The position numbers and the translations under genes were made by a program. The notes under the pieces were generated by a model. It was given only the letters and a program-made list of their open reading frames with translations. It was not told where the DNA came from and did no database searches. Positions 3,907 to 52,696 of a stretch of 64,000 nt of DNA are shown here, one piece after another; positions within the stretch are counted from its first letter, which is position 1, and every line of letters begins with the position of its first letter. The DNA is taken from the IMG/VR virus record IMGVR_UViG_3300032770_000002, positions 1 to 64,000 of that record; one strand, given 5' to 3'.

Positions 3907-3920
3907 GTTCTTTCGAACCT

Positions 3921-5162
3921 ATGGCAGACGACAATGAGCAGATGGTCATTCCATCTGCAGTGATTACCACCTTCAAGCGGCCATTCTGCATGGTGCGAAA
4001 CGACGAGGAGGTTTGGGAGTTTAAACCGCCCTACCGATACCTGTTCATGTCGGACCACCTTGGATACGCGGCTGAATATGTTGACACGGTCTCATCTCTT
4101 GAGTCTTGCTCAACCTATAAGCCTCTGCGTGCCGCGGCCAACCTCGTTGACCGAAAGATTTACGTTGAACGTCACCGTGACCGAGGCATTGGCGACCTGC
4201 TTTTCATGACCGGGGTGATCAACTACATTCAGTCAGTCACGGCCTTTGGGGCGAAGATTTACATTTACGCCTTGTCTGACCGTGGACAGGTCTTGTTTAA
4301 TCACCCGTCCCTTGCTGGTCGCATGCCGTATTATGGGCCGACGATCATCGACTCGCTCCGGTCATTTGACTACCATTGGATCGTTCCAACGGTGACTGAG
4401 CACAATGGCGAAGACGACCAGTTGAACGTCTACGACGCTCTTTTCAGGTCCGTAGGCCTTGACCCAGAACAGATTGACCCGAAGTTCAAACGACCCACGG
4501 TGTGTCTCGATGAAAAAGACGAAGCCAACCTGAACAGCTTGTTTTTCTTCATCTACAACGACAAGAATATTGACTTTCGAAAGATCCCATACTACGTTGT
4601 CGCGCCATTCTGTTACAGCTCGCTTCGAGCTTTTCCATATGGAATGTGGTTGAGCCTGTTGAAGGAACTCGCGGACCAGCGGCCAGTCATCGTTCTTGGC
4701 GAGATGAAGCACAAGCTTCCAGCGCCTGACATGAGTGCGGCCGATTTTGTGGCATCTTTGGGCAACATCAGTTCTAAAAACCCAATCATCAACTTGATCG
4801 GTGACGTTCCACTGCGCCTGTCCATGTCGGTTATCAACCAAGCGAGGTGCGTTTTCTGCCTTGACAGTGGCCCACTTTACATTGCCCAGGCGCTACGCAC
4901 GCCGGCCATTTCATTGTGGAGCAACTTAAACCCGGCCATTCGCATTGGTTACGATGCGCCCTACATGGCGTCGGCTGTTTGGCCGCGCCAGGCTTGTTAC
5001 CACGCGCCCTGTTACGCGTTCAGCGGGTTTCCTACAGACCTGTGCCCAAGGCATGAACATCAGCGTTGTTGTGAAGTGGCCATGGCCGTCGAGCCATCGA
5101 TGGTTCTAGAGAAGCTGGATCGCATTGAAAAAGACAACCCACGAAAAGTGGCCGTCGAATGA
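3921..5162 (+). CDS. GT9-family (heptosyltransferase-like, GT-B) glycosyltransferase
   Basis: RGIGDLLFM near the N-terminus and VFCLDSGPLYIAQALRTPAISLW near the C-terminus are GT9 signatures. Confidence 0.8.
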   Translation: MADDNEQMVIPSAVITTFKRPFCMVRNDEEVWEFKPPYRYLFMSDHLGYAAEYVDTVSSLESCSTYKPLRAAANLVDRKIYVERHRDRGIGDLLFMTGVINYIQSVTAFGAKIYIYALSDRGQVLFNHPSLAGRMPYYGPTIIDSLRSFDYHWIVPTVTEHNGEDDQLNVYDALFRSVGLDPEQIDPKFKRPTVCLDEKDEANLNSLFFFIYNDKNIDFRKIPYYVVAPFCYSSLRAFPYGMWLSLLKELADQRPVIVLGEMKHKLPAPDMSAADFVASLGNISSKNPIINLIGDVPLRLSMSVINQARCVFCLDSGPLYIAQALRTPAISLWSNLNPAIRIGYDAPYMASAVWPRQACYHAPCYAFSGFPTDLCPRHEHQRCCEVAMAVEPSMVLEKLDRIEKDNPRKVAVE

Positions 5163-5614
5163 GTGATTTTCCAGAGCTTCCAACACTTCGTCACATCACG
5201 TTAGGCGACTACAGCCTCAACGTCAGCCATTACCTGACGAAGGAATACGTTGACATCAGTGAAGCGGCGGCTGAGTTGCCGGCCATCATCGAGTGGATCA
5301 ATGAAAAACTCCAGGAGATGATTGAGTCGCGTGAACTGGCCAAGTGTGAACTGAAGCGACGTGAAGCTGCGGCCTTTTTTGACTTCCGCAAAAATGGCTT
5401 TGATGAAGACGAAGGCCTCTCTGGAAAGCCGACTGACAAGGCCGTTGAGTATGCCATCGAACTTCAAGAGAGTGTCAAAGAAGCCAACGAAAACCTTGCT
5501 GTTCTTGAAGGTTGGGTTTCACGATTAAAAAACCAACTCGAGACCTTCCGGGTCAAGTTCGACTTGATTCGATCAACTGAAGCTACACGACGAAAAGATT
5601 ACGAGACCACATGA
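5159..5614 (+). CDS. UvsY-like recombination mediator
   Basis: Coiled-coil 151 aa protein (KPTDKAVEYAI...LKNQLETFRVKFDLIRS) directly upstream of the SSB and RecA genes, with ATGA overlaps. Confidence 0.5.
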   Translation: MSDFPELPTLRHITLGDYSLNVSHYLTKEYVDISEAAAELPAIIEWINEKLQEMIESRELAKCELKRREAAAFFDFRKNGFDEDEGLSGKPTDKAVEYAIELQESVKEANENLAVLEGWVSRLKNQLETFRVKFDLIRSTEATRRKDYETT

Positions 5615-7018: not shown

Positions 7019-8512
7019 ATGGCTCGCCGACGTGCGCAAAGCCCCGGTGCTGCACCCGCAGCTCCAAAGGGAAAGAAACTTGACCTGATTGGGCGTTGCA
7101 TCTCACGCATCCAGCGGTCATCCCCACGCAACTTTGAGAATGGCCAGATCCAGGTGATGCGAATGAATAGTTCACGGATGTTTTCATCCGTGAAACACGT
7201 CATTCGAAGCGGCCTTGACCCATTTGACGACATCGTCGGTCCGATCCCAATAGGCCGCGTCATGGAGGTCTACGGTCCCGAGGCCTCAGGAAAGACGGCC
7301 TTTGTCAAGAAGGTTTGCAAGCAAGCCTTCCTAAAGGACCTGTGGATTTACAACCCTGATGGCTCCCTGTCAAAGATCGAGGACGACACTGAAGTTGTCG
7401 TGTGCTATTTCGATAATGAGCACTCCATCGAGTCGTCAAACAACGAGATCATCATTGACGGCGTCAAGATTGATGGCATCCTGACGGAGTGTGACGTCAT
7501 TGAAGACCTGTGGAAGACCGTCGACAACGTCCTTGACGAGGTGAAGCTGTCGGCCAAGAATGAGGAAGAAAAACGCAAGAAGGCTGAAAAGGACGGCAAG
7601 ACTTACAAGCCAAAGAAATTCCTGACCGTCTTTATCGTTGACACTATTGCGTCAACGTCATCAATTGAGGAATACACCAAGGACTGGGGCGAGGAAGATT
7701 ATCCTCGCATGCCGAAAAAGCTCAAAGAGGGCTTTCGCCGAATGGTTCGCCGCATCGGCAACGAGAACGTCATCTTCATCGCCAGCAACCAGGCCAACGA
7801 GACGTTCGGCAACAAGAGCCGATACATTGCTCCTGACAAAAAGTTCAATTCACCCGGTGGCAAGGCGCTCAAATTCTTCGCCTCAACCCGAGTTCTTTTT
7901 GAACAGCTTCCAGTCAAGTTCGTTCTCGACGAGGAATACCAATTTCAACAGGGGTATGTCATCAGCTTTATCAGCACCAAAAACAGGTTAAAGAAGCCGC
8001 TTCGCGAAGGTCGGCTCATCCTGCTTTTTGACTCGGCCCCGAACATCTACGGTGACATAAGTCCGAGTGGGCTGAACAATGAATACTCGATTCTTGAAAC
8101 CCTGCTTTACCTGAAGTTCGTTCAATTTGAGGATGACAAGTTTCTTCGGTTCCACTTTCGGAAGTTCGAAATTCCGATGACGACGTTCAACGACCTCGAG
8201 GATGATGAGGACCCGCGAATGCCGAGTCGTGCCGATTGGGTGGCGTTCTACGCCGCTCATAAGGCTGACATTGACATGATGTGGAGAGCGGCCATCGACT
8301 ACATTCACAAGGACCGGTGCCTGACTAACGTCAGGGCCATTGAGGACAAGTCCACGGGCGAAGAGGAAGGTGAACAAAATGAAACTGGAAGTGACGGGTC
8401 GCCGGTTCAAAATGACACAGAACCAGCAACCTGTGAGAGTGTAAGTGACGCCCCAGCAATACCGTTGATTCCTCGAACGGGGGCTGTCTTGAGCATTCCA
8501 AATGAACCGTAA
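7019..8512 (+). CDS. recA: RecA/UvsX recombinase
   Basis: GRVMEVYGPEASGKT (Walker A), FIVDTIAS (Walker B), IASNQ, SPGGKALKFFASTRV. Confidence 0.93.
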   Translation: MARRRAQSPGAAPAAPKGKKLDLIGRCISRIQRSSPRNFENGQIQVMRMNSSRMFSSVKHVIRSGLDPFDDIVGPIPIGRVMEVYGPEASGKTAFVKKVCKQAFLKDLWIYNPDGSLSKIEDDTEVVVCYFDNEHSIESSNNEIIIDGVKIDGILTECDVIEDLWKTVDNVLDEVKLSAKNEEEKRKKAEKDGKTYKPKKFLTVFIVDTIASTSSIEEYTKDWGEEDYPRMPKKLKEGFRRMVRRIGNENVIFIASNQANETFGNKSRYIAPDKKFNSPGGKALKFFASTRVLFEQLPVKFVLDEEYQFQQGYVISFISTKNRLKKPLREGRLILLFDSAPNIYGDISPSGLNNEYSILETLLYLKFVQFEDDKFLRFHFRKFEIPMTTFNDLEDDEDPRMPSRADWVAFYAAHKADIDMMWRAAIDYIHKDRCLTNVRAIEDKSTGEEEGEQNETGSDGSPVQNDTEPATCESVSDAPAIPLIPRTGAVLSIPNEP

Positions 8513-15552: not shown

Positions 15553-17388
15553 GTGCCCGAACCGCTAGTGGCTTTTCTGGACTGTGTAGTCAACGTGGGC
15601 GACAAAAAGCTGTTGCTTGAAGATACAGTCGGCGAATTCGTCGTTTCCAGCGGTCCGCAGCGGATTACTGAGAGCGAAGTCAATGGCCGAAAATTCATTC
15701 ACATTTCCGGGCGTTTATCACTTTGTGACACGCTAAACGGGAACAACCGCATCTACCCGCGAAAGGTATGGGAGCGGCAGTTCCAGCCGGACTCCAAACT
15801 GATGAAGCTGATTGAGCGTAATCGCTCTGTCGGCCTGCTCGAACACCCCAAGGACGGTCAAGTCACCCTCAACTCTCCAATTTCCCACCTTCTCGTCAGT
15901 GCAAAGCTCAATGAGGATGGAACCGTTCAAGGCGAACTGCGTCTCATCAACACGCCCGAAGGCCAAAAGCTAAGGGCCCTCATTGAAGCTGGTTACAACC
16001 CGCTTGTTTCAAGCCGTGGTTACGGTTCCCTCGAAAAGGACACTGAAGGCCACGACGTCGTCCAAGAGGACTACGTCTGTGAGGGTTGGGACGCCGTCTT
16101 CCACCCGTCATTTACGCAATGCGAGCTTGAAGCGGCAGGCGCCGTTGAGAGCACTGGCCAGCTACGTTCTGGTCGACGTCTCGGTGAGTCAACGCCTGGC
16201 GTCAACATGTGGTGCGTCTACCAGGCGTTAAGCGAGCGTGACTATGGGCGAACTTGGATGGCTCTCAGTGAGAGTGAGCGAGACGCCGTCGCCCAAAAGG
16301 CAAACTTACTTCCGCAGGACGAGAAAGTTCGTCTCGAGTCTGAGTTTAACGCGAAGCGGGTGGCCAAGATCACCATGGCCGAAAACAGGGAAAACAGGGT
16401 GATCAAGGAGAATCAAGGAATTTCGGGTCAGGCGACGCCGCCGAAACCCGCGCCTACTGGGGCGGCGCCTCAAGTCCCCTCAACCAACGAAAATCATATG
16501 GACGCGATTCGTCAAAAGTTACTCACAATCGCGGCTTTGAACCCGAAGTCGATGACGCCGACGCAACTCAGCGAAAGCCGAAATCAGCTTCGTGGACTCC
16601 ACAACGACGTGGCCAAGTGGCAAGCTGAAGATCAGACTCGTTCCTACGAGGCTGGCCAGATCCACAAGTCCATCGAGGAAGTTGAGTCGAAGTTCGACGA
16701 AGCCATCACTGGACCGAGGGCTGAAAGCGCGCGGTTATTGACCGAACGCCAGAAAACCCTGTCGGTGCTCAGTGCTACGGTCGATGCCGCGAAGACCATC
16801 AAAAAGCACCTCACCGAAGCCATTAGCAAGAATGGCAAGCTTGCTTCGGTGAACGCCAAGCTGCTCGAAGCCGTTCGTGCCTGGAAACAGGAAGCCGAGC
16901 ATTTTCAAGCCCTCGCAGCCCTTTACGAGGACAAGTATAACCTTTCGTGCGACACCCTCGACGTCATGTCGGATCGGTGGAAGTCAAATACCACTGAGCT
17001 GGGACGGCGCGTTGTTGAGCTCGAATTTGCCGAGGCGGTGAAGAACCCCGAGGTGAAGAAGAAGCTCGACGAAGCGAAACACCCGGATGATGTCGCCGAC
17101 GTGCGCGAATCCCTGTTGCCGAAGAACGGCACGGGCCAGGTCGTTGAAAATCAGGGCCAACCGCAGGGCAAGCCTCAAGGTCAGCCGGCACAAGCCGCTC
17201 CTCAGGGCCAACCCCAGCCGTTGAACGAGGCCCAGCGCTCAACGTCTAACGCGACGGCACAATCGCAGGGCGGACTGAAGCAGCCAACGGTCGTCCAACA
17301 CACGCGGCATCCCGGCACGCTCAAAGAGAGCATTGCCATTGCTCGTCGGTTGTCAGGAAGGCCAGTCGAAGCCGCCGCGGCTGCGTAA
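15553..17388 (+). CDS. Prohead protease (T4 gp21-like) fused to coiled-coil scaffold
   Basis: NGNNRIYP, GLLEHP, ISH, NTPEGQKLRALI, VSSRGYGSL, WDAVFHPS; long coiled-coil C-terminal half. Confidence 0.9.
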   Translation: MPEPLVAFLDCVVNVGDKKLLLEDTVGEFVVSSGPQRITESEVNGRKFIHISGRLSLCDTLNGNNRIYPRKVWERQFQPDSKLMKLIERNRSVGLLEHPKDGQVTLNSPISHLLVSAKLNEDGTVQGELRLINTPEGQKLRALIEAGYNPLVSSRGYGSLEKDTEGHDVVQEDYVCEGWDAVFHPSFTQCELEAAGAVESTGQLRSGRRLGESTPGVNMWCVYQALSERDYGRTWMALSESERDAVAQKANLLPQDEKVRLESEFNAKRVAKITMAENRENRVIKENQGISGQATPPKPAPTGAAPQVPSTNENHMDAIRQKLLTIAALNPKSMTPTQLSESRNQLRGLHNDVAKWQAEDQTRSYEAGQIHKSIEEVESKFDEAITGPRAESARLLTERQKTLSVLSATVDAAKTIKKHLTEAISKNGKLASVNAKLLEAVRAWKQEAEHFQALAALYEDKYNLSCDTLDVMSDRWKSNTTELGRRVVELEFAEAVKNPEVKKKLDEAKHPDDVADVRESLLPKNGTGQVVENQGQPQGKPQGQPAQAAPQGQPQPLNEAQRSTSNATAQSQGGLKQPTVVQHTRHPGTLKESIAIARRLSGRPVEAAAAA

Positions 17389-17421: not shown

Positions 17422-18873
17422 ATGGTTATCCTGTCAATGGAAGGCCGCCCGGAATTGGTTTCAGACGGGGGCCAAGCATGTAACACGACCGAAATCTATG
17501 AGTGGGGTGCACACCTCGCCAGGACGCCGGTCGGTGTTGAAGAAGGCGACCCGAAAGGGTTGTGGAAGGCGAAAGGTTGGAAAGACCTGGTCGAGCACAT
17601 GGCGCCTGAAAAGCAGGCGTATGCGGCCGTCCTTCTCGAGAACGCGCGACGCAAGTTCGGGCGCCTCGACGAAGTGACCCGCACCCAGAACCTGGGCACG
17701 TTCGACAAGTGGATCTTCCCGATCATCGCGAACATGTCCGAAAACGACGTCATCGACCAGCTCGTCTCGGTTCAACCGATGGCCGGCCCAGTGTCGCAGA
17801 TCGTCTACATGGACATCGTGACTGACCGTCGGAAAGGTCGCATTCCTCAGGGTGCTCCAATGTGGCGCGCCACTCAGGGTGCTTCTGACCGTGACGGTGA
17901 CTCGGACGAACTGATTCAGGACGAGCCGGGCAACATGGCGTCGAACAAGATCACGTGCGACTGGACGCCACTGCGGCCTGGAACGATCGTCGTGACAGTC
18001 GGCTCTGACACCGTTCAGGACGATGGCAACGGTTTGCTTGGCGCGTCCGGGTCTATCGTCAGCGGCTCAGTCGATTACGCGACTGGCGTCATCACTGTGA
18101 CGGGGCCTGGAGCGTCTGACGCTTACACGGTGACCTACCAGTATAACTCGGAAGGCAACCAGAGCGTGATGGGTTACGAGATGAAGCTCACCTCGACCCC
18201 CGTGACCGCGAAGGTCATGAAGCTCAAGGCCGTCTGGTCCGAGGAAGCCGACCAAAACCTGCAGAGCATGTATAACATCGGCGCCGAGCCGACGATCGTG
18301 AACTCCATCACGAATGCGCTGCAATACCAAAAACACCGCCAGGTCATCTTCGACCTTCGCGCGCGAGCCGATGCTGGTTTCGTTGTCTGGGACGCTGTGC
18401 CTCCCTCGAACACGAACTACCAGACCCACAAGTTCAGCTTCAACGACGCTGTGCAGACGGCATCGATGTTCATCTTCGGCGCTACCAACCAGGCGACAGG
18501 CAATTGGCTCCTGCTTGGCTTGCAGCCGACGACGGTCGTTGTCACCCTGCCTCAGTTCGTTGCCCGTGCCAACCGCGTGGAAATGCAGGGCATCACCTAC
18601 ATCGGCGACTTGGCCGACAAGAAGGTGTTCGCCGACCCGCACTATCCGAATAACGAGTGGATGGTGGGATTCCGCGGGCGCCAGTTCGTCCAGACTGGCT
18701 TTGTCCTGGCCGAGTATCAAAAGCTCTACACTACGCCGGACATCATGCTCCCGGACTTCTTGCACCAGCGCGGTTTTGCGACCTCGTTTGCCAAGAAGAT
18801 GGTGAACAGCAAGATGTTCTGCCGCGGTATGGAGATCAACGCTCCGACCAACTTCACTGGCGCAATCGGCTAA
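17422..18873 (+). CDS. Major capsid protein (T4 gp23-like)
   Basis: LVSVQPMAGPVSQIVYM and VTAKVMKLKAVWSEEADQNL; follows the protease gene; AAGGA RBS; strong terminator downstream. Confidence 0.93.
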   Translation: MVILSMEGRPELVSDGGQACNTTEIYEWGAHLARTPVGVEEGDPKGLWKAKGWKDLVEHMAPEKQAYAAVLLENARRKFGRLDEVTRTQNLGTFDKWIFPIIANMSENDVIDQLVSVQPMAGPVSQIVYMDIVTDRRKGRIPQGAPMWRATQGASDRDGDSDELIQDEPGNMASNKITCDWTPLRPGTIVVTVGSDTVQDDGNGLLGASGSIVSGSVDYATGVITVTGPGASDAYTVTYQYNSEGNQSVMGYEMKLTSTPVTAKVMKLKAVWSEEADQNLQSMYNIGAEPTIVNSITNALQYQKHRQVIFDLRARADAGFVVWDAVPPSNTNYQTHKFSFNDAVQTASMFIFGATNQATGNWLLLGLQPTTVVVTLPQFVARANRVEMQGITYIGDLADKKVFADPHYPNNEWMVGFRGRQFVQTGFVLAEYQKLYTTPDIMLPDFLHQRGFATSFAKKMVNSKMFCRGMEINAPTNFTGAIG

Positions 18874-45383: not shown

Positions 45384-45851
45384 TTAAAAATTTAATTTGG
45401 CAAAGGAACCAAAAATTTTTCTGGCTTGACGATCATAAACCACGGCCGCTTCCGCTTCATCGTCAAACTGCCCAATAAAATTGTGTTGAACGCTAACACT
45501 CCATTTTCGATTTTGCTTATTCCAACTAACTCCTTTAAATTGACTTGAACGATTTGGGGTTTTACGTCTATTTGCGGTATTTTGGGCATGGGTCGCTGGT
45601 CGAAGATTTGACCGTGTATTATTCAGACCGTCACCGTTTTCGTGATCAACCTCTGGCAATCCAATTTTTGCAGCTATTTCACGGTGCATGTAAACACTCT
45701 TCTCACCGGCCGACGGGACGCTCTTGGCATACCAGTAAGTTTTATGTTTTGTTTGACTCTTTACCGCATACCATTTTCGTAGACTAAGCCATTCAAAATC
45801 TTCATCATCGACTAAAGCCGATTTATTTTGCGTAAGCGGTATTCTTTTCAC
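45384..45851 (-). CDS. HNH endonuclease with AP2 domain
   Basis: GTG overlapping the upstream TAG; IPLTQNKSALVDDEDF, YMHREI, VDHENGDGLNNTRSNLR, SQFKGVSW. Confidence 0.9.
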   Translation of the reverse strand: MKRIPLTQNKSALVDDEDFEWLSLRKWYAVKSQTKHKTYWYAKSVPSAGEKSVYMHREIAAKIGLPEVDHENGDGLNNTRSNLRPATHAQNTANRRKTPNRSSQFKGVSWNKQNRKWSVSVQHNFIGQFDDEAEAAVVYDRQARKIFGSFAKLNF

Positions 45852-47542
45852 TAAAAATTTCCGATGACCAGTGCCGGGCATGTCTGCTGGTCTGCCTTTT
45901 TTGCGTTGAACCGCAGGTCGTTTATGGCGTCTTCGACGCTGAAAACAATTGGCACGCCGTGGACGTTGAACGACGTGTTTATCAACGGAGTTCCGCACTC
46001 CTCAAGGATGCGTCGAATTGGAGCGGGTTCTGTCGGGTAAATGATTTGCGGCCTTCCTGACCATGAACTTTGGTCAGGATAAACGTGGGCGACGCCCATA
46101 AAATTATCCACAGGACGGACGTAATTGAGCGTCGTGATCATGTAGCGTTCTGAACCGACAACTCTGTTGAGGTTTGATTCAAAGGCCCACTTCGCCCACC
46201 TGGATGAAACGACCGGGGCAAATGGCATGACCGTATTTCGGCCGTTGATGTAATTGATGGTGTCAACATTTTCACTCGTCGGAACGGCTAGCGTGGACGT
46301 GTTGCAGAGTGCTCGCGGGCCAAACTCCATGTTTCCGTGGATGGTGTTGACAAGTTTGTTGGCCTTCAACAATTGCAAGACCTGCTCAATGTAGTCGTCA
46401 AGCGTGTGGGCAACGCGAACGTCAAGCTCGTCGCCATTGAGCATGATTCGCCTGAACGAAAGGTCACGCCTTCCCCACTTGAGCGACGTGAACGGAAATG
46501 AATATCCCTTGGAGGCGTAGACTCCGATCGCCGCTCCTTGGTCACCAGCAAGTGGAACTGCGCAAAACTGGCCGGAGATGGAGCTGAGAATGGAGTGGTT
46601 TAGCTTGACGTTGTAGTGCACGCCGCCTGTCACGATGACGTGCTTGACTCGGCTCCACGTCAAGATGAACCGGTAGGCTTCTTCGATGACCGTTTGAATG
46701 TAGTGGCCAACCACGACTCGAGTTTCCCACTGGTTAACGGTATTTAGGGCCTTGACGATCTTTCTCAGCCTTGCCCTGATTTTTCGTCTGGCCGACTCCA
46801 TGTCGTTAACTTGGATGAAGTCATCGAGTTTCGACTCCTGAGGGCGGAGAAAATTTGCGCTGCAAATCGAGGCCCACTCTTCGGCGTGGTCTTTTGCCAT
46901 CTGACGAAGCCACTCGATTTCCCGGCTACGGAGGACTTCGTTGACGTGACTCTCATAGCCTAGAAATTTATACTCGTCTTGGTTCATCGTCATCCCGACA
47001 AATTCAGTGGCATACTGGTAAAGCAATCCAAGTGACTTGTCGTAACCGTAGATCCGTGAAAGAAGTTGTGGCGTCCAACGCTCGGTGTCCGGCTGAATGA
47101 CGTAGATGGAAAACACCTCTTGGGCTGTGCCAAAACCGTCACTGACGACGATGTGGACGTCCCCCTCCGGCACTTGGCGCATGTGGCGTCGGTAAAATTC
47201 CACGGCCGCCCAAGCGTGTGAGTCGTGGTGTGTAAATCTGTGGTCTACGGACACGATCTTGCACTTTGGCAGGAACGTGCGAAGCACGTCAGGCTGCCAA
47301 TACTTCTGGAGCCTTGCGTGACGGGCTTTTTCAAGATTTTCACAGTCAAACCAGTGTGAGACGTAAACCGTCACGTCCTTCTTGAGCTTGGTGTGCTTGA
47401 TGACCTCATTGATGGCGTTGATTGGGAAGCGTGAGTCACTTTTCTTGCGAGTAAGCCGCTCTTCTTCGTATCCAATAACGTCAACGCCGTCGGTCCAGAT
47501 GGCCGAGGCATTGTGTCCGAGTGTGAGAAGTAGGTTGTTCAC
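45851..47542 (-). CDS. Carbamoyltransferase, NodU/CmcH/TobZ family
   Basis: GHNASA, YEEERLTRKK, HHDSHA, SDGFG, SLGLLY, EYKFLG, GGVHYNVKLN, GDQGAAIG, EFGPRAL, PFAP, INTSFNVHG.PIV. Confidence 0.93.
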   Translation of the reverse strand: MNNLLLTLGHNASAIWTDGVDVIGYEEERLTRKKSDSRFPINAINEVIKHTKLKKDVTVYVSHWFDCENLEKARHARLQKYWQPDVLRTFLPKCKIVSVDHRFTHHDSHAWAAVEFYRRHMRQVPEGDVHIVVSDGFGTAQEVFSIYVIQPDTERWTPQLLSRIYGYDKSLGLLYQYATEFVGMTMNQDEYKFLGYESHVNEVLRSREIEWLRQMAKDHAEEWASICSANFLRPQESKLDDFIQVNDMESARRKIRARLRKIVKALNTVNQWETRVVVGHYIQTVIEEAYRFILTWSRVKHVIVTGGVHYNVKLNHSILSSISGQFCAVPLAGDQGAAIGVYASKGYSFPFTSLKWGRRDLSFRRIMLNGDELDVRVAHTLDDYIEQVLQLLKANKLVNTIHGNMEFGPRALCNTSTLAVPTSENVDTINYINGRNTVMPFAPVVSSRWAKWAFESNLNRVVGSERYMITTLNYVRPVDNFMGVAHVYPDQSSWSGRPQIIYPTEPAPIRRILEECGTPLINTSFNVHGVPIVFSVEDAINDLRFNAKKADQQTCPALVIGNF

Positions 47543-48510
47543 TTTCGCTTGTCTATCGCGTTAAATAGCAGGTTCATGACGCACTGGTAGTGGACATATT
47601 TTGAATTGCCACGAGACGTGGTGCAGAACAGCGACCTCATGGCAGGTGAAATTGGAGCTGTCAAGTTTCCTTCAATCGTCAGCAGGTCATGAAGCAACAT
47701 CGAGGCTTCGCCGGGCTCTAGCGGAGGAAATGTCAGAGCCATGCCAGCGGGTTCACCGACTATAAGCGTGTCATCTCGAACGTGGAATGAACCGACATTG
47801 TGGTGGTAATAACCCATCTTAATGCCACTTCGGCCTTTTCCCCAAAGTTCGGCACGGACATAGTCCATCAAAAACGTAAAGAAGGCCACGTCATATCGAA
47901 ATCCATTCCACAGTTCATTGGACCGCATTGTCGCAATGGCGTGAAGCGCACCGTCACGCACTAAAAATTGCAAACTGGTCGTGCAAATGTGGTCTTTTGT
48001 GTCACTGAGATTGACCCTGGGACGGTTAAACAGGACGACGGCTTGCCTTGACATCGGGTCCTTTGCCAACCGCTTGATGGCCAACTCAAGCTGTCCTTCC
48101 TCGAAGACATACTGGCCGTAATTCGAGTTGATGTCGACACGCGTGTCTTCTGGAATGCTGCCGTCACGATGTTTGGCTGCGACGTTGTCCGTGATGCGTT
48201 TCCACATGTCTGGCCGATACTTGTCGATGCCATGAAGACGCTGATCGGCTTTGGCATACCACGCCAATTGGGCACCGACGTAGTCAATGTCGTCTTCAGG
48301 CCTTGAGGTTTGGGTGAAAAAGACCGCCCCTGGGACTTCGACGCTAAAGTGAAAATTCAGCAACTCGAGCCAACGAACGCCCTGGTGGTCTTCGACAACT
48401 GGAGCCTTGCAGAGTTGGTCGATACAGCTTGAAAATTTCAGCCCAAGTTTTTCATCCTTTTGCAATGTAGGCGTCGATGATGCTGTTGATGGTATTGACA
48501 TCGGTTTCAT
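47539..48510 (-). CDS. Thymidylate-synthase homolog, dCMP hydroxymethylase (T4 gp42)-like
   Basis: INSNYG, DPMSRQ, DHICT (catalytic Cys), MRSNELWNGFRYD (Asp at the cytosine-specificity position), NVGSFH. Confidence 0.85.
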   Translation of the reverse strand: MKPMSIPSTASSTPTLQKDEKLGLKFSSCIDQLCKAPVVEDHQGVRWLELLNFHFSVEVPGAVFFTQTSRPEDDIDYVGAQLAWYAKADQRLHGIDKYRPDMWKRITDNVAAKHRDGSIPEDTRVDINSNYGQYVFEEGQLELAIKRLAKDPMSRQAVVLFNRPRVNLSDTKDHICTTSLQFLVRDGALHAIATMRSNELWNGFRYDVAFFTFLMDYVRAELWGKGRSGIKMGYYHHNVGSFHVRDDTLIVGEPAGMALTFPPLEPGEASMLLHDLLTIEGNLTAPISPAMRSLFCTTSRGNSKYVHYQCVMNLLFNAIDKRK

Positions 48511-49063
48511 TGTCAGCGCTGACTTCGGTTATTTGGGACGACTGGTAGAAGCCGTGGATAAGCGTCCGGATAAACAAGAACTCGACATCCTGGAGAAGCC
48601 CCAGTTCGTTTGGGCGCATCGCATCAGACTCCTTTTTAGGCAACGGCCGAAACAGGAAGATGTGGTCGTAGGTTCTTGCGGTGGTCAGCGTTCGAAAGTA
48701 AAGCCACTTGAAGAAGCTCGTGTATTTTTCGAGCTGCAAGCTTGTCAACATTGACTTGTCAACGTAAAAAACGTAGTAGAAAAATGAATCGGCAAGTGAC
48801 CGGTCGGTCAGGATGATGGAATTCGGGTGTTTCTTGAGGGCGGCCTGTTCAGCGTTGAACTTCTCGCTGATGATTTCAATTTGCAGTTCAATGTATCGGA
48901 CTGGGTCCCGTCGAAGGGCGTCAATGTTGTCAATGCTAGCCCGGTCACGAATGCAGTCGCCAAGAACGACGACCCCGTTATAGTTTGTCCTTTCGGCAAT
49001 CTTTCGAATCATCGTGGACTTGCCCGAATGACACGCACCAGAAAAAGCGATCAACTTGCTCAT
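48452..49063 (-). CDS. P-loop (d)NMP kinase-like protein
   Basis: IAFSGACHSGKSTMI, ILTDRS, YDHIF; first gene of the modification operon. Confidence 0.75.
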   Translation of the reverse strand: MSKLIAFSGACHSGKSTMIRKIAERTNYNGVVVLGDCIRDRASIDNIDALRRDPVRYIELQIEIISEKFNAEQAALKKHPNSIILTDRSLADSFFYYVFYVDKSMLTSLQLEKYTSFFKWLYFRTLTTARTYDHIFLFRPLPKKESDAMRPNELGLLQDVEFLFIRTLIHGFYQSSQITEVSADNETDVNTINSIIDAYIAKG

Positions 49064-49093
49064 CGTTGGGTAGAACTGTTCTTTGTGGTTGGC

Positions 49094-49867
49094 ATGGCAA
49101 TCAAGACCAAACTTACAATTGACGTTCCCTCACGTGAACGGTTGAAACAGACCATTACGCTTTTGTCCCAAGGAGCGGCCAACCCAAAGGCATTCCCTGA
49201 CGGCCAGATTACAGTTTACCCATGGGATGTCCAGGTTGACGACTGGCTTGTCAAGTCAGGCCGCAACACGGACAGCAGCGTCTTTGACGTGATCCCTAAA
49301 CTCGCTGAACTTAACGGCTGTGACCTGGACGACCTCTTTGTTGGCGACGCAAGCACCATCCTTCTGGTCTCGCGATCGCTTCGTCACGGCAACAAAATTG
49401 ACTTTTCGCCCGTCTGCACGAACTGCCGCAAGACGAACAACGTGGTGACGCTAGACGTTCCAAGGCAGCTTCGCAAACTGGCTGAGAAACCCAAGGGGTG
49501 GGGCGGGACTGACACCATCGTCCTGCCCAGCATTAAGGACGAGATTGAGATTCGTCCACTGCGGCTTAAGGATGAAAAGGCCATTGAAAACATGACCCCT
49601 GAGGCCGCAGCGATGGTCCCGCCGGTGACGGCTCGCATGTGCCGCGCCATCGTGTCAGTCGGCGGTGGAAAGCCAGACAGTGTTGCGGAGATCGTGTCCT
49701 ATCTTAGGCGCCTTGACCCAGTTGACCAAGACTACTTGAGTGAACAGATTGACGCGCTTCACCCGCGCCTCGACAGCGATGTCACCTTCGTCTGTGACTA
49801 CTGCGGAAAGCAGTTCGTCTACACGATTAGCTTTGACCGCAACTTTTTTCGTAGCCGCGTCGCTTAA
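49094..49867 (+). CDS. gp26-like baseplate hub assembly / tail assembly chaperone
   Basis: DLFVGDASTILLVSR, CTNC and CDYC pairs, EIEIRPLR, C-terminal RNFF. The true start at 49094 is divergent from the kinase gene. Confidence 0.72.
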   Translation: MAIKTKLTIDVPSRERLKQTITLLSQGAANPKAFPDGQITVYPWDVQVDDWLVKSGRNTDSSVFDVIPKLAELNGCDLDDLFVGDASTILLVSRSLRHGNKIDFSPVCTNCRKTNNVVTLDVPRQLRKLAEKPKGWGGTDTIVLPSIKDEIEIRPLRLKDEKAIENMTPEAAAMVPPVTARMCRAIVSVGGGKPDSVAEIVSYLRRLDPVDQDYLSEQIDALHPRLDSDVTFVCDYCGKQFVYTISFDRNFFRSRVA

Positions 49868-50027
49868 AGCACTCAAGGTCCACTGGTCGACCTTGGCGAC
49901 GACGGCATTTTTTGTGCGAGGGGCGGTAATCGACCTAACCCGAGTCCCAGATTACGCCATTGACTGGGTCATTGAGACGTTTTCGGAACTTCAAGAAAAG
50001 ACGAAAAACGTCCCAAGAATGTGGTAA
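49842..50027 (+). CDS. Probable frameshift extension (gp51/gpGT-like) of the gp26-like protein
   Basis: The +1 frame is open across TTTTTTC at 49844-49850, giving ...VHWSTLATTAFFVRGAVIDLTRVPDYAIDWVIETFSELQEK; no good start nearby. Confidence 0.6.
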   Translation, partial: TFFVAASLKALKVHWSTLATTAFFVRGAVIDLTRVPDYAIDWVIETFSELQEKTKNVPRMW

Positions 50028-50032
50028 AATAA

Positions 50033-51031
50033 TTGTTTACAGTGAATAAGTGGCTTGAGGTCATCAATGTTGAGTGTCCGGATCACGGGCCGTATCAGGT
50101 TCAACGACAAGCTTTTGACGGGAAATTAAAAGGTTGTCCTGATTGTATTAAAATTTATCGAGTTTCAAAGGTGAATCAAATTCGAAAATTAGTCAAAAAT
50201 CGCCCTGGCCCAAAGAAGTGGTATAAAACTGAAACTGGACGTTTATTCCTTCTCCGACAGGCCGCTGAAAATAGTCGAAGAGCTGAATTGAGAAGACGTA
50301 GAAGGTTTACTCCTCAAGTCAAAAACTTAGTTAGAAAATTTTGTCATGTTGATAAAAGGTGGCTTCAAAGCAACGGATATTCGATTGATGCCGCACTTCG
50401 ATTTTATGCTGATGTCTACGTTGATTTTGATGTCGATTTTGACGTTCTCGACTCAGTTATTACACGAGATGAACGTTTGTCCGGCCATGAGCACGATCGT
50501 CCAACAATCAGGGCATCTACCATCGCCAGGTGTATTCGATGGACTGGCACGGTTGGTCAGGGTAAAATTCAACAGCCAATATTTTTCAAGTCATTCTTGA
50601 AAACTGGAAGTGGCAACTATCCCATTATAGTTGCACGTCGTGCGGCATTTGAATTTTTTCACGGCTTAAGTCTACCAGATGACGTGTATGTTTTACCTAA
50701 CTGTAAACATTGTCTGGATGTCTTATGCATTAATCCATTACACCATTTTTTAGGTGTGGAGAGAAATCGTCAGGACTACGTCAGAAGTATTTCAAATGTT
50801 GGTCGTCCAAAGACTAATGTGAAATCAACCCAATCCTCAGTGCCGCTTTCAATAAGGCCATTGAAGCTATATCCACTTCCAACCGGCTGGACAAGACGAT
50901 ATTTTGGTAAAATCACACGAACTGGCAAAGATGGAGAAACATGGCGCAAAAATTTTTTGAATGTGGCGAAACACGGTGGAAAAACTTTAGTGGAACTAGT
51001 AGTTGATGCCCGTGTTAATGGAGAATCGTGA
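50033..51031 (+). CDS. Degenerate HNH (Zn-binding-loop type) homing endonuclease-like protein
   Basis: CPDHG...GCPDC N-terminus; CIRWTG...VARRAAFEFFHG...C...CINPLH; AT-rich. Confidence 0.6.
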   Translation: MFTVNKWLEVINVECPDHGPYQVQRQAFDGKLKGCPDCIKIYRVSKVNQIRKLVKNRPGPKKWYKTETGRLFLLRQAAENSRRAELRRRRRFTPQVKNLVRKFCHVDKRWLQSNGYSIDAALRFYADVYVDFDVDFDVLDSVITRDERLSGHEHDRPTIRASTIARCIRWTGTVGQGKIQQPIFFKSFLKTGSGNYPIIVARRAAFEFFHGLSLPDDVYVLPNCKHCLDVLCINPLHHFLGVERNRQDYVRSISNVGRPKTNVKSTQSSVPLSIRPLKLYPLPTGWTRRYFGKITRTGKDGETWRKNFLNVAKHGGKTLVELVVDARVNGES

Positions 51032-51206
51032 CACCGTCAAATGCCCGAAGTGCGGCCACGAGTTCCGGTGTGACGTTGGCTGGCAGAAAGCTAGTGTTGC
51101 AGTTGGGTGTCCGAAGTGTTCGGAGATGATTCACCTGAATCTGCGCGGCTCTGGCACCAGCCCTGATGCTCGGCCAATCGTCGGGCCCAGGCCAGAAAAG
51201 CCGTGA
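51018..51206 (+). CDS. Small Zn-ribbon protein
   Basis: VKCPKCGHEF...VGCPKCSEMI. Confidence 0.55.
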   Translation: MENRDTVKCPKCGHEFRCDVGWQKASVAVGCPKCSEMIHLNLRGSGTSPDARPIVGPRPEKP

Positions 51207-51804
51207 CTGTGAAGGCGTTTTTTGCGATGTTACACTGCTTGCAACACGGGACCACATTGTCATCAATGTAACCTCGCTTGGAGTCAACTCGGTCAATCCC
51301 CATGTAACAGAATCTTGTCGGGTTAAATCTTCCAAGGCCATTTCTATATTCGACTGGGTAAGGTCTGCATCCACAATAGTGACAGTCGCTTTGCATAAGT
51401 CTTTTGGCCAATTCCTTGTCGAGGTTAAATTCAACATTCATTCTGAGAGATCGTTGATATATCGAGTTGAAGACTCGCGTGAATCCGGCTTCAAATGAGT
51501 TAATGCGAGTGACCCTGGTGGCCGCGGCAGTTCTGATCTTTTGGGCGCATTGAGCGCACTGTTTCATGCTATGGTTTTTCCTGCCGAATAAAGACGATGG
51601 TGGAACTAATTTGACGTTTCCGCAGGTGCATTGAAGTTTGAAGCACCACAGCAGTTTTCCACCGTAACGTGAATTTTGGGCCCACTCGTAACCGATGACT
51701 TTGAAACGACCGATTTCAGACCCGATTGGGTGTTCTTGAATGTATTGAGCACGTTTTTCTTTTCGAAGATTTTTACGGTGTTCCTCCGTCATTATGTATT
51801 TCAT
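51091..51804 (-). CDS. HNH endonuclease
   Basis: CTCG; CHYCG...GIDRVDSKRGYIDDNVVPCCKQCNIAK. Confidence 0.88.
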   Translation of the reverse strand: MKYIMTEEHRKNLRKEKRAQYIQEHPIGSEIGRFKVIGYEWAQNSRYGGKLLWCFKLQCTCGNVKLVPPSSLFGRKNHSMKQCAQCAQKIRTAAATRVTRINSFEAGFTRVFNSIYQRSLRMNVEFNLDKELAKRLMQSDCHYCGCRPYPVEYRNGLGRFNPTRFCYMGIDRVDSKRGYIDDNVVPCCKQCNIAKNAFTVTAFLAWARRLAEHQGWCQSRADSGESSPNTSDTQLQH

Positions 51805-51832: not shown

Positions 51833-52696
51833 ATGACTGACCTCATAATTGACGGGAATGGATTTTTCGCTCACGCGTATTATTCGGCGGTTAAGCACGG
51901 GCGTGATCCTGTGAAAGTGGCCATGAAGTCAATCGTCAAGATGATTCGAAATGACGAATCTTACTTTTCACGGCACATTGATAGGCTTCTTTTTTGTTGG
52001 GACGGGGCTCCTAAGACGGCTAAACATCGGCCAACTCCAAAGCCTGAAGATTATCATCCGAAATTGGCTGACTTTTCTACGAGGTTGACGCCATTGACTG
52101 GAAGTGCTCAAGTCATGCTTGATGACCATGAAGCGGACGACGTTGTCGCTTCTGCGTCAGAGCAGACTAAAGCTGATCATGTGGTGGTCGTTAGTTCGGA
52201 CAAGGACCTCTCGCAGCTCCAATGTGACCGAGTCTCGTTTTATGACGTTCACTCGAAGATGCTCTTGACGCGGCGGGTCATCTGTGAGCGATGGCATGTT
52301 CACCACCCAATCCAAGTCGCCATTGCACTGGCCATCATTGGGGATATCGGGGACGGCATCAAGGGCGTGCACAAGTGGGGTGAGGGAAAGGTCAAAAAGC
52401 TATTTTCAACCATCCCACGTGAGACGCCGTTCGACCAGGTCATCGAGATCATCGTCAGTCAGATGAACGATGAACAGCAGGCTCAGTTTCTCGAGTGTTT
52501 GAGCGTGACGCTGTTGGACACGACAATAGAAGGCGTTCCTGAACCTGCGCCAGTAGCGCTGGATGACACTGAGGCGCGCAAGATTGAGCGAGAGATGGCT
52601 ATGCCATGGGCTGCCAGCGACAAGACGTCGCAGAACATCAACGAGTTTGACCGCTGGATGCGCGGTGAGAAAGTTACAGGCTCATCAACGGGATAG
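51833..52696 (+). CDS. 5'-3' exonuclease / RNase H (FEN family)
   Basis: LIIDGN, EADDVVAS, SSDKDLSQL, AIIGDIGDGIKGV..WGEG. Confidence 0.92.
   Translation: MTDLIIDGNGFFAHAYYSAVKHGRDPVKVAMKSIVKMIRNDESYFSRHIDRLLFCWDGAPKTAKHRPTPKPEDYHPKLADFSTRLTPLTGSAQVMLDDHEADDVVASASEQTKADHVVVVSSDKDLSQLQCDRVSFYDVHSKMLLTRRVICERWHVHHPIQVAIALAIIGDIGDGIKGVHKWGEGKVKKLFSTIPRETPFDQVIEIIVSQMNDEQQAQFLECLSVTLLDTTIEGVPEPAPVALDDTEARKIEREMAMPWAASDKTSQNINEFDRWMRGEKVTGSSTG

What the first reader, a model, noticed from the sequence alone, without database searches (positions are those of the whole stretch)
49841..50027. Probable +1 (or -2) programmed ribosomal frameshift in the gp26-like gene
Seen: the ORF ends ...AAC TTT TTT CGT AGC CGC GTC GCT TAA. 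The +1 frame (TTC GTA GCC...) stays open for about 60 codons to 50027 and encodes a plausible helical segment (HWSTLATTAFFVRGAVIDLTRVPDYAIDWVIETFSEL). Its only upstream ATG (49740) gives junk sequence deep inside the previous gene. Known: tail chaperones use G/GT-type frameshifts, usually -1; UUU_C sites are +1 shift-prone, and a T6 run also permits -2. Inference: a short and a long product are made, fusing the gp26 and gp51 equivalents.
Basis: partly seen in the sequence, partly recalled or inferred. Interest (0 to 1): 0.65.

Follow-up and report, generated by a model that had tools for sequence, protein, structure and literature searches.

The report
Frameshifted tail chaperone gene (gp26-like)
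A T4-like giant phage appears to make a short and a long form of its gp26-type tail/hub assembly chaperone by a +1 ribosomal slip at UUU_UUU_CGU, which looks like the missing T4-group counterpart of the lambda G/GT tail-chaperone frameshift, with T4 encoding the two forms as separate genes (26 and 51).

Summary
The gp26-like gene (ATG 49094, TAA 49865-49867) carries in-frame TTT TTT CGT at 49844-49852. The +1 frame stays open to TAA 50025-50027.

Comparison with relatives makes it significant:
- 21 distinct relatives (34-61% protein identity) were read. Twenty keep TTT TTT CGN at the same codon and one has TTT CCT CGT.
- All encode a conserved 54-66 residue peptide in the +1 frame. The zero-frame tail is 0-51 codons of unconserved sequence.
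- Codon periodicity flips from frame 0 to frame +1 at the T-run.
- Many relatives have a +1-frame stop just upstream and no usable start codon.

Variant sites (TTT_CCT, TTT_TCT, TTC_TTT_CGT) fit only a +1 slip of tRNA-Phe. They fit neither a -2 slip nor transcriptional slippage.

The protein belongs structurally to the T4 gp26 family (PF12322), and its best solved-structure matches are phage tail assembly chaperones. In cultured relatives the gene lies between the tail tube and tape measure genes. It carries the same extension, in the +1 frame in some and in the -1 frame (U_UUU_UUC) in others.

T4 gp51 is itself a PF12322 protein with a related in-frame C-terminal tail. No experiment supports any of this yet.

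The parts
49094..49867 (+). Zero-frame CDS of the gp26-like (PF12322-type) chaperone, short form, 257 aa, with a four-Cys zinc-ribbon motif (C108, C111, C234, C237).
   Evidence: ORF and gene call. Invariant Cys columns. AlphaFold model pLDDT 85.2, pTM 0.81. ESM Atlas PF12322 cluster TM 0.79/0.81. 63 BFVD 'baseplate hub/gp26' matches. hhalign to T4 gp26 E 6e-5.
49844..49852 (+). Shift site TTT TTT CGT (UUU_UUU_CGU). Proposed E-site codon 49844-49846, P-site codon 49847-49849, A-site codon 49850-49852.
   Evidence: It is the most conserved nucleotide block in the 22-sequence alignment. Columns 34-41 are invariant or nearly so. At the site 43 of 44 Phe codons are TTT, against 41% TTT elsewhere in these genes.
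49847..49850 (+). Core tetranucleotide UUU_C, on which peptidyl-tRNA-Phe is proposed to re-pair from UUU to UUC (+1). Base 49850 is skipped as a codon start.
   Evidence: It is the only element shared with the +1-frame variant sites of relatives: L006 TTT_CCT, L033 TTT_TCT, HSE3 TTC_TTT_CGT, immuto TTT_CTT, LR756508 TTT_CTA. UUU_Ynn and UCC_UUU_CGU are documented +1 sites (PMC5009743).
49865..49867 (+). Zero-frame stop TAA, four codons after CGT.
   Evidence: In relatives the zero-frame tail after the Arg codon is 0-51 codons long and not conserved.
49851..50027 (+). +1-frame extension (58 codons plus TAA) giving the long form: join(49094..49849, 49851..50027), 310 aa. Predicted helix-loop-helix.
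   Evidence: Conserved peptide in 22 unique sequences (A3). Codon periodicity switches to frame +1. 91 representative clusters. AlphaFold pLDDT 90.2, helices 2-22 and 35-53. Fused translation P0012.
49854..49905 (+). Strong local RNA hairpin starting 2 nt after the CGT codon. A possible lineage-specific stimulator, or incidental.
   Evidence: -26.7 kcal/mol for the 60 nt after the site, stronger than every other 60-nt window of the gene. Similar outliers occur in L003, L004 and L010. It is not conserved across the family: RNAalifold finds no consensus and the mean percentile is 0.40.

Best explanation
The gene at 49094-49867 encodes a gp26-family (PF12322) protein with the fold of phage tail assembly chaperones.

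Most ribosomes terminate at TAA 49865 and make the 257-aa short form. A fraction shift +1 at UUU_UUU_CGU. Peptidyl-tRNA-Phe on UUU (49847-49849) re-pairs with the overlapping UUC while the A site waits for CGU. Decoding then resumes at GUA 49851, and a 310-aa long form is made with a C-terminal helix-loop-helix domain.

The pair is the functional counterpart of lambda gpG/gpGT (P2 E/E+E'). Both forms share a chaperone body, inferred to act on the tape measure/hub. The extra domain on the minor long form is inferred to recruit another tail component.

T4 appears to have replaced the frameshift with two paralogous genes: 26 (short form) and 51 (body plus an in-frame tail).

Shown here:
- conservation of the site and of the +1-frame peptide;
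- the frame switch in the substitution pattern;
- the absence of usable start codons;
- family membership and chaperone-like fold;
- gene order and -1/+1 variants in cultured relatives.

Inferred, not shown: that ribosomes (not RNA polymerase) shift, the efficiency, and the roles and binding partners of the two forms.
For: Site and peptide conservation:
(1) 20 of 21 distinct relatives at 34-61% identity keep in-frame TTT TTT CG[T/A/C] at the homologous FFR position. All 21 encode a homologous 54-66 aa peptide in the +1 frame starting right at the site.
(2) Column entropy is highest at zero-frame codon position 3 upstream of the site. Downstream it is highest at zero-frame position 1, which is +1-frame position 3.
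(3) Nucleotide-level selection: TTT is 41% of Phe codons elsewhere but 43/44 at the site. CGT is 13% of Arg codons elsewhere but 20/22 at the site.

No independent start, no in-frame fusion:
(4) In L008, L010, L013, L015, L016, L019, L020, L022 and L031 the +1 frame has a stop 8-14 nt upstream of the T-run. The first ATG/GTG/TTG then comes 40-133 nt into the conserved peptide. L017 has none at all downstream.
(5) No in-frame fusion exists. All 91 profile hits are 31-91 aa fragments with arbitrary starts, except one that reads into the next gene. All 10 word-search homologues are 254-283 aa.

Direction of the shift:
(6) The variant sites CCC_TTT_CCT (L006), CCC_TTT_TCT (L033) and TTC_TTT_CGT (phage HSE3) allow +1 re-pairing only.
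(7) UUU_Ynn is +1-prone in bacteria, and UCC_UUU_CGU is the influenza PA-X +1 cassette (PMC5009743).

Chaperone identity:
(8) The top solved-structure matches are the tail assembly chaperones 3KLU (Z 7.7, 100 of 119 residues aligned), 2OB9 (Z 5.9, 98/104) and 3FGX (Z 4.7), plus 5IR0 (Z 5.2). The next row is Z 2.9. PMC9603447 names the first three as tail assembly chaperones.
(9) PF12322 proteins of phages immuto, SP-15, HSE3, Mel-JY01 and phiAS5 lie directly after the tail tube gene. In the first three an annotated tape measure gene follows. Each has an extension ORF at the FF motif: +1 in SP-15, HSE3, immuto, Mel-JY01 and LR756508; -1 at U_UUU_UUC in PA5oct, Atu_ph07, S-CAM8 and phiAS5.

T4:
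(10) T4 gp26 ends 3 residues after the aligned FF. T4 gp51 is PF12322 over residues 1-201 (E 3.9e-52) with a 48-aa tail. That tail matches the phiAS5 extension (E 4e-5) and a profile of nine extensions (E 6e-5).
(11) Leiman 2010 lists gp26 and gp51 as hub assembly chaperones (PMC3004832). One public record names both 'tape measure protein assembly chaperone'.
Against: There is no experimental evidence. No RNA run holds the locus, and the only run is assembled DNA contigs, so transcript heterogeneity at the T-run could not be examined.

No conserved stimulatory RNA structure or upstream Shine-Dalgarno-like element was found. Many relatives carry another in-frame UUU_C at the invariant A-F-P motif. 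What makes this particular site efficient is therefore unexplained.

The strict conservation of the first TTT (T6) within the window's clade is not required by a simple UUU_C slip. It would also suit a -2 slip.

In the window the gene is not next to tube or tape measure genes, and the tube gene could not be located.

The chaperone-fold Z scores (4.7-7.7) are in a range the tool warns can reflect a common arrangement.

Similarity between the window-clade extension and the extensions of the other groups, or the gp51 tail, is only a shared pattern and is not significant.
Confidence: 0.75

Rival explanations
1. A -2 ribosomal frameshift on the U6 run. Peptidyl-tRNA-Phe on the second UUU slides back two bases onto UUU, and decoding resumes at UUC GUA. 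The long form would then carry one extra Phe (NFFFVAASLK).
For: The T6 run permits perfect re-pairing. The wobble T of the first Phe codon is kept in 22/22 unique clade members although TTT is only 41% of Phe codons elsewhere. A plain UUU_C +1 slip does not require that.
Against: Relatives that reach the same +1-frame peptide lack the run. L006 has CCC TTT CCT, L033 has CCC TTT TCT, HSE3 has TTC TTT CGT, immuto has TTT CTT and LR756508 has TTT CTA. A -2 re-pairing of tRNA-Phe is impossible at those sites, so a second mechanism would be needed for one family.
Confidence: 0.08
2. Transcriptional slippage. RNA polymerase omits one U (or adds two) on the T6 template run, and the long form is read by standard translation of the edited mRNA.
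For: The homopolymeric T6 is strictly conserved in the clade. No RNA data were available to exclude transcript heterogeneity.
Against: Six Ts is short for productive slippage; from my own knowledge, the bacterial cases use runs of about 7-9 or more. Relatives with only T3 or T4 at the site keep the +1 extension. The conserved C-G after the run is explained by UUU_C/CGU decoding, not by polymerase slippage.
Confidence: 0.05
3. The downstream frame is an independent small gene, for example starting at TTG 49893 or by termination-reinitiation after TAA 49865, and is not fused to the gp26-like protein.
For: Gene callers call small ORFs here (43 aa in L005, 38 aa in L006). About half of the clade has ATG/GTG/TTG at codon 16 of the peptide. 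LR756508 and Mel-JY01 have an ATG just upstream of the site.
Against: The first 15 residues (FVxAS...L..RW) are conserved and begin exactly at the T-run, before the zero-frame stop. The start-like codon at position 16 is a conserved hydrophobic residue; it is CTG, CTT, TTA, GTC, ATC or ACG in others. L017 has no start codon at all, and L020 none before codon 44. The zero-frame stop lies from 0 to 51 codons after the site, so reinitiation geometry is not conserved.
Confidence: 0.04
4. No recoding: an old frameshift mutation or assembly error cut off a C-terminal domain, and the open +1 frame is a remnant or chance.
For: A 60-codon open frame and one TTTTTTCG are not beyond chance in a single 64-kb window.
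Against: The same arrangement occurs in 29 independently assembled loci down to 34% identity. The +1 frame shows purifying selection on the peptide and codon periodicity. An independent assembly confirms the T6. No in-frame version exists among relatives.
Confidence: 0.02

Closest known systems
Lambda gpG/gpGT-type tail assembly chaperone frameshift (also P2 E/E+E'; Xu, Hendrix and Duda 2004, as summarised in PMC5009743)
   Same: Two products share an N-terminal chaperone body. The shift lies a few codons before the zero-frame stop, and the extension is a small extra domain. The arrangement is conserved despite very low sequence similarity. In cultured family members the gene sits between the tail tube and tape measure genes. 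The best solved-structure matches of the body are tail assembly chaperones. Family members use either -1 or +1 to reach the extension.
   Different: The direction here is +1 at UUU_UUU_CGU, not -1 at an X_XXY_YYZ heptamer. The body is about 250 aa with an inserted four-Cys zinc ribbon and belongs to PF12322, which is annotated 'baseplate hub' rather than as a recognised chaperone family. In the window, as in T4, the gene is not in the tube/tape-measure slot. Binding partners and product ratio are untested.
T4 gp26 and gp51 (hub assembly chaperones; PF12322)
   Same: The window protein matches PF12322-type models structurally. It aligns with the C-terminus of T4 gp26 so that its FF (251-252) matches T4 F204-F205. 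gp51 is PF12322 plus a 48-aa tail that resembles the frameshift extension of phiAS5-type phages.
   Different: T4 has no frameshift. gp26 stops 3 residues after FF and gene 25 starts at its stop codon. The long form is a separate, divergently transcribed paralogous gene (51). T4 gene 26 also has an internal-start product, 26'. The direct Pfam score of the window protein is below threshold (14.3 bits against 24.5).
+1 frameshift sites of the UUU_Y / UUU_CGU type (influenza A PA-X UCC_UUU_CGU; bacterial UUU_Ynn; Yersinia YopN-TyeA)
   Same: The P-site codon is UUU followed by C, so tRNA-Phe re-pairs with UUC. The A-site codon is CGU, exactly as in the influenza cassette. No conserved downstream structure is needed (PMC5009743).
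   Different: The E-site codon is UUU instead of UCC. The host is an unknown bacterium, so it is not known whether CGU is slowly decoded there. The efficiency is unknown.

Membership tests
T4 gp26 / PF12322 (T4_baseplate, 'baseplate hub / hub assembly chaperone') | Sequence match to the Pfam model above its gathering score | tested here: inconclusive
   The window protein scores E 0.033, 14.3 bits, against a cut-off of 24.5. phrog_150 'baseplate hub' gives E 2.5e-6. There are transitive links. tblastn to LR756508 gives E 4e-11 over 98% of the query, and that protein scores 57.5 bits on PF12322. Homologue P0002 carries a precomputed PF12322 hit. hhalign of A1 against T4 gp26 gives E 6e-5, probability 65%.
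T4 gp26 / PF12322 (T4_baseplate, 'baseplate hub / hub assembly chaperone') | Same fold as family members | tested here: met
   The ESM Atlas cluster that is 63% PF12322 matches at TM 0.79/0.81 over 239 residues. BFVD gives 63 matches at E <= 1e-3. These include SP-15 'baseplate hub subunit' (TM 0.74/0.77) and Aeromonas phage 25 Gp26 (E 2.6e-6).
T4 gp26 / PF12322 (T4_baseplate, 'baseplate hub / hub assembly chaperone') | Two Cys pairs (zinc ribbon) and a C-terminal FF motif | tested here: met
   C108, C111, C234, C237 and F251 are invariant in A1. FF aligns to T4 F204-F205 after the CPECGK knuckle.
G/GT-type tail assembly chaperone with programmed frameshift | Tail assembly chaperone fold (HK97 2OB9, YqbN 3KLU, Rbstp2171 3FGX) | tested here: met
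   VIA-align against 48,161 chains gives 3KLU Z 7.7 (rmsd 3.7, 100 aligned), 2OB9 Z 5.9 (98 aligned), 5IR0 Z 5.2 and 3FGX Z 4.7, with the next row at Z 2.9. Foldseek ranks 2OB9 fourth with probability 0.66. The Z values are moderate, and the tool warns that values under 8 can reflect a common arrangement.
G/GT-type tail assembly chaperone with programmed frameshift | Gene located between the tail tube and tape measure genes | tested here: not met
   In the window the neighbours are a nucleotide kinase, a thymidylate-synthase-like gene, HNH endonucleases and a 5'-3' exonuclease. The feature is met in the cultured PF12322 phages immuto, SP-15 and HSE3 (sheath, tube, gene, small ORF, tape measure). 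It is partly met in Mel-JY01 and phiAS5, where the gene follows the tube gene. T4 itself also fails this feature.
G/GT-type tail assembly chaperone with programmed frameshift | Conserved shift near the 3' end giving short and extended products with a common N-terminus | tested here: met
   The evidence is comparative only: for the clade, and for cultured relatives (+1 or -1). No protein data exist.
G/GT-type tail assembly chaperone with programmed frameshift | Body binds the tape measure protein, extension binds the tube protein, low long:short ratio, both absent from virions | not testable with these tools
   The tube gene of this genome was not found, so no complex prediction was run. [quoted passage not shown]
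+1 frameshift sites of UUU_Y / UUU_CGU type | P-site UUU followed by a pyrimidine, so that tRNA-Phe can re-pair +1 | tested here: met
   UUU_C lies at 49847-49850. It is shared by every family member whose extension is in the +1 frame.
+1 frameshift sites of UUU_Y / UUU_CGU type | Slowly decoded A-site codon | tested here: inconclusive
   CGU is the A-site codon in 20/22 clade members, and CGT is only 13% of Arg codons in these genes. However, G and T are also fixed by the +1-frame Val codon, the host tRNA pool is unknown, and the window has no tRNA genes.
   hhalign of the clade extension profile against gp51 gives probability 0.2%. The extension is 58 aa and gp51 is 249 aa. An indirect link exists: the gp51 tail (203-248) matches the phiAS5 extension (E 4e-5) and a nine-sequence extension profile (E 6e-5), both for a one-sequence search.
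Transcriptional slippage sites | Long homopolymer run needed in all members | tested here: not met
   The window has T6. Relatives have T3 or T4 at the site: L006, L033, HSE3, immuto and LR756508.

The most novel reading that the evidence does not exclude
The whole PF12322 'baseplate hub' (gp26/gp51) family is the tail assembly chaperone of T4-like and many jumbo myoviruses, and a G/GT-type frameshift at its C-terminal FF motif is ancestral. The frameshift is retained as -1 (U_UUU_UUC) in cyanophages, phiAS5, PA5oct and Atu_ph07, and as +1 (UUU_Y) in the window's clade, SP-15, HSE3, immuto and Mel-JY01. T4 is the textbook exception only because it split the two products into paralogous genes 26 (G-like) and 51 (GT-like). 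Public annotations of these phages would then be missing a recoded gene.
Probability: 0.55. Interest if true: 0.8.

Novelty: new variant of a known kind. Interest (0 to 1): 0.72.

Why it matters
The tail-chaperone frameshift is one of the most conserved recoding events in phages. The 2016 review by Atkins and colleagues states that it is found in long-tailed phages 'except T4'.

The data here suggest that the T4 lineage is not an exception in principle:
- Its gp26-family chaperone is frameshifted in many relatives, by +1 here and by -1 in others.
- T4 encodes the short and long forms as genes 26 and 51.

This would give a concrete role to two T4 proteins (gp26 and gp51) whose function has stayed vague for decades.

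It would also add a bacterial-virus example of the UUU_CGU +1 site known from influenza A.

It flags a systematic annotation gap. In the nine public phage genomes examined here, none of the features listed under or beside the gene records ribosomal slippage, and the extension is either unannotated or called as a small separate ORF.

It is directly testable in cultured phages such as SP-15, HSE3, PA5oct, phiAS5 and S-CAM8.

Tried and rejected
- **DNA and pattern searches:** megablast of the region against phage records found nothing. A pattern scan of IMG/VR with the single protein found nothing; the alignment-based scan worked.
- **The extension alone:** tblastn gave only chance hits. Pfam and PHROGs gave nothing significant. 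A structure search gave only generic helical hairpins, Z <= 5.6 with no separation from the rows below.
- **Stimulators:** RNAalifold found no consensus structure. Downstream folding energies are unremarkable on average. There is no conserved upstream Shine-Dalgarno-like sequence. The simple terminator scan does not flag the window's hairpin.
- **Fused long form:** The body and the extension were folded separately instead.
- **Reads:** only one DNA run holds the locus, kept as contigs and probably the source sample.
- **Tube protein for a T-domain/tube complex test:** it was not found with PF06841 or with the tube proteins of immuto and SP-15. A PHROGs scan of ORFs near the capsid genes did not find it either.
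- **Other structure and sequence searches:** Foldseek against PDB gave no match at E <= 1e-3. The PDB sequence profile search gave only zinc-finger noise.
- **Literature:** ten searches found no paper linking gp26/PF12322 to a frameshift or to tail assembly chaperones. The library lacks most subscription journals, so this is not proof of novelty.
- **Rejected readings:** chance ORF, assembly error, independent small gene, -2 shift and transcriptional slippage. The reasons are given under the rival explanations.
Full report
**1. The observation**

The window is the first 64 kb of a 230,253-bp virus record with direct terminal repeats. It encodes a T4-type major capsid protein (PF07068, E 3.8e-25). 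The only run that holds the locus is labelled wetland metagenome.

- The +1 frame is open from 49740 to TAA 50025-50027 and encodes the quoted peptide.
The upstream ATG is at 49779.
- By itself this is not beyond chance: TTTTTTCG occurs 3 times in the window against 5.6 expected.
- An independent Logan assembly of the probable source run has the same sequence.

**2. Comparative test**

A word-based protein search gave nine homologues of 254-283 aa at 38-61% identity and none of about 310 aa. A protein of that length would have been within the tool's length range.

Their contigs, plus 21 IMG/VR loci found with the alignment, give 21 distinct relatives down to 34% identity.

- Twenty of the 21 have in-frame TTT TTT CG[T/A/C] at the homologous F-F-R position.
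- After it the zero frame runs 0 to 51 codons of unrelated sequence. Four loci read FFR-stop.
- The +1 frame encodes a 54-66 residue peptide that aligns from the first residue after the site (A3; mean column identity 44%).
- In the nucleotide alignment the T-run plus CG is the most conserved block.

Column entropy by codon position shows the frame switch:

| Region | Zero-frame position 1 | Position 2 | Position 3 |
|---|---|---|---|
| Upstream of the site | 1.29 | 0.88 | 1.50 |
| Downstream of the site | 1.69-1.70 | 1.25-1.36 | 0.69-1.20 |

Downstream, zero-frame position 1 is position 3 of the +1 frame, so the frame under selection switches at the run.

Codon choice at the site departs from the rest of these genes. 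Phe is 41% TTT elsewhere but 43 of 44 at the site. CGT is 13% of Arg codons elsewhere but 20 of 22 at the site.

**3. Not an independent gene**

- In nine distinct relatives the +1 frame has a stop 8-14 nt upstream of the run, and the first ATG/GTG/TTG comes 40-133 nt into the conserved peptide.
- L017 has none at all downstream.
- A profile of the peptide searched against 1.84 billion representatives found 91 clusters (38 at E <= 1e-10).
- All are 31-91 aa gene-caller fragments starting at arbitrary profile positions, apart from one call that reads on into the next gene. None is an in-frame fusion.

**4. Which mechanism**

- No conserved downstream RNA structure or upstream Shine-Dalgarno-like sequence exists.
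- The window itself has a strong hairpin at 49854-49905, as do L003, L004 and L010.
- One sublineage has replaced the run by CCC TTT CCT CGT (L006) or CCC TTT TCT GTT (L033) and keeps the +1 peptide.
- Cultured relatives reach a +1 extension from TTC TTT CGT, TTT CTT TGG and TTT CTA.
- The element common to all is UUU followed by a pyrimidine. tRNA-Phe can re-pair +1 there. A -2 re-pairing or polymerase slippage is not possible at those sites.
[quoted passage not shown] It also records UCC_UUU_CGU as the minimal influenza A +1 cassette. The window's site has the same UUU_CGU core.
- Open points: the first TTT is strictly kept within the clade, and another in-frame UUU_C (the invariant A-F-P) is tolerated elsewhere in many relatives.

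**5. What the protein is**

- The direct Pfam score for PF12322 is below threshold.
- The AlphaFold model of the short form (pLDDT 85.2, pTM 0.81) matches an ESM Atlas cluster that is 63% PF12322 at TM 0.79/0.81.
- It also matches 63 BFVD 'baseplate hub/gp26' models.
- hhalign places its FF on F204-F205 of T4 gp26, which ends three residues later.
- Against 48,161 solved chains the four best matches are 3KLU (Z 7.7), 2OB9 (Z 5.9), 5IR0 (Z 5.2) and 3FGX (Z 4.7). The next row drops to Z 2.9.
- PMC9603447 names 2OB9, 3KLU and 3FGX as phage tail assembly chaperones.
- The extension folds as helix 2-22, loop, helix 35-53 (pLDDT 90.2). It has no specific structural match.

**6. Cultured relatives**

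The gp26-like protein of LR756508 is the only phage-record hit of the window protein (E 4e-11). It in turn hits cultured phages, and several of their proteins score far above the PF12322 cut-off.

In Flavobacterium phage immuto, Bacillus phages SP-15 and HSE3, and Microcystis phage Mel-JY01 the gene follows the tail tube gene. In the first three a small ORF and the tape measure gene come next. This is the classical slot of the G and T genes.

Every one has an extension ORF starting at the FF motif:

| Phage | Site | Frame of the extension |
|---|---|---|
| SP-15 | TTT TTT CAC | +1 |
| HSE3 | TTC TTT CGT | +1 |
| immuto | TTT CTT TGG | +1 |
| Mel-JY01 | TTT TTT TGG | +1 |
| LR756508 | TTT CTA | +1 |
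| PA5oct, Atu_ph07, cyanophage S-CAM8, Aeromonas phage phiAS5 | U_UUU_UUC | -1 |

- Extensions are clearly homologous within groups: pairwise E from 3e-16 to 7e-6.
- Across groups they share a pattern only: aromatic residues, G, a short hydrophobic stretch, then a basic/acidic helix.
- None of the features listed under or beside the gene in these records is marked as joined or as slippage. phiAS5 labels the small ORF 'baseplate hub assembly catalyst', the T4 gp51 name.

**7. T4**

- Gene 26 (208 aa) ends GAG TTC TTT GAG TTA CTA TAA, and gene 25 starts at its stop. There is no extension.
- T4 gp51 (249 aa), encoded divergently next to gene 26, is itself PF12322 over residues 1-201 (E 3.9e-52).
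- gp51 is weakly similar to gp26 (E 2e-6).
- Its remaining tail aligns with the phiAS5 extension (residues 203-237, E 4e-5). It also aligns with a profile of nine extensions (residues 212-248, E 6e-5). Both values are for a one-sequence search.
- T4 therefore appears to encode the short and long forms as two paralogous genes.
- Leiman 2010 lists both as hub assembly chaperones and says gp51 is absent from the particle.
- One public record already names both 'tape measure protein assembly chaperone'.
- The 2016 review states that G-T frameshifting is conserved in long-tailed phages 'except T4'.

**8. Verdict**

- The extension corresponds to the gp51-specific tail rather than to gp51 as a whole. 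For the window's own clade that correspondence is positional and architectural, not statistically shown.
- The finding is a new variant of a known kind: the tail-chaperone frameshift, here by +1 at UUU_UUU_CGU in the gp26 family.
- Nothing has been shown experimentally. The efficiency, the role of the first TTT, and the partners of the two forms are open.

Noticed in passing
window 50033-51031 (+) and 51091-51804 (-): Two HNH/endonuclease VII-type ORFs (phrog_1872 E 1e-4; phrog_3322 E 5e-16) lie between the extension and the 5'-3' exonuclease gene (51833-52696). In relatives L003, L004 and L006 the exonuclease gene follows the extension directly. These look like homing-endonuclease insertions.
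   Followed up: partly
window 49854-49913: The strong hairpin 49854-49905 is followed by a second T6 run (49908-49913, the A-F-F codons of the extension). This gives a terminator-like look inside the extension ORF. The simple terminator scan does not flag it, and it is not conserved in relatives.
   Followed up: partly
L032 (T4 NC_000866) 4480-5229 and 3803-4429: T4 gp51 is a full-length PF12322 (gp26-family) protein (E 3.9e-52, residues 1-201) with a 48-residue C-terminal tail. This makes it a paralogue of gp26 carrying an in-frame equivalent of the frameshift extension seen in other phages.
   Followed up: yes
L035-L042 (Mel-JY01, immuto, Atu_ph07, SP-15, PA5oct, HSE3, S-CAM8, phiAS5): In these public records no feature listed under or beside the PF12322 gene is marked as joined or as slippage. 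Yet all have a conserved extension ORF at the FF motif: +1 in four and -1 at U_UUU_UUC in four. The extension is unannotated or called as a 36-78 aa hypothetical protein. In phiAS5 it is called 'baseplate hub assembly catalyst'.
   Followed up: yes
L043 (Acinetobacter phage Meroveus MT741943) 1-1245: This record annotates both the gp26 and the gp51 homologues as 'tape measure protein assembly chaperone'. The chaperone reading of these genes therefore already exists in at least one public annotation.
   Followed up: no
P0053 (representative protein, 261 aa): In one metagenome representative the extension ORF has no stop and reads straight into the 5'-3' exonuclease ORF. This is either a gene-call artefact at a contig end or a natural fusion.
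   Followed up: no
homologues L003 3100, L004 3100, L005 442, L006 1095 and others: Many relatives carry a second in-frame TTT_C at the invariant Ala-Phe-Pro motif near codon 34. A bare UUU_C is therefore evidently not enough for harmful levels of +1 shifting.
   Followed up: partly
window 45851-49063 (-): There is a run of nucleotide-metabolism and auxiliary genes upstream on the other strand: a Nol-like carbamoyltransferase (45851-47542), a thymidylate-synthase-like gene (47539-48510) and a nucleotide kinase (48452-49063). The kinase ORF overlaps the long artefactual 5' part of the ORF 48827-49867.
   Followed up: no
window 7019-8512, 15553-17388, 17422-18873: T4-like core genes are present: a UvsX-like recombinase, a prohead protease and a gp23-type major capsid protein. 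ARAGORN finds no tRNA gene in the window. PF06841 did not find the tail tube gene anywhere in the genome.
   Followed up: partly
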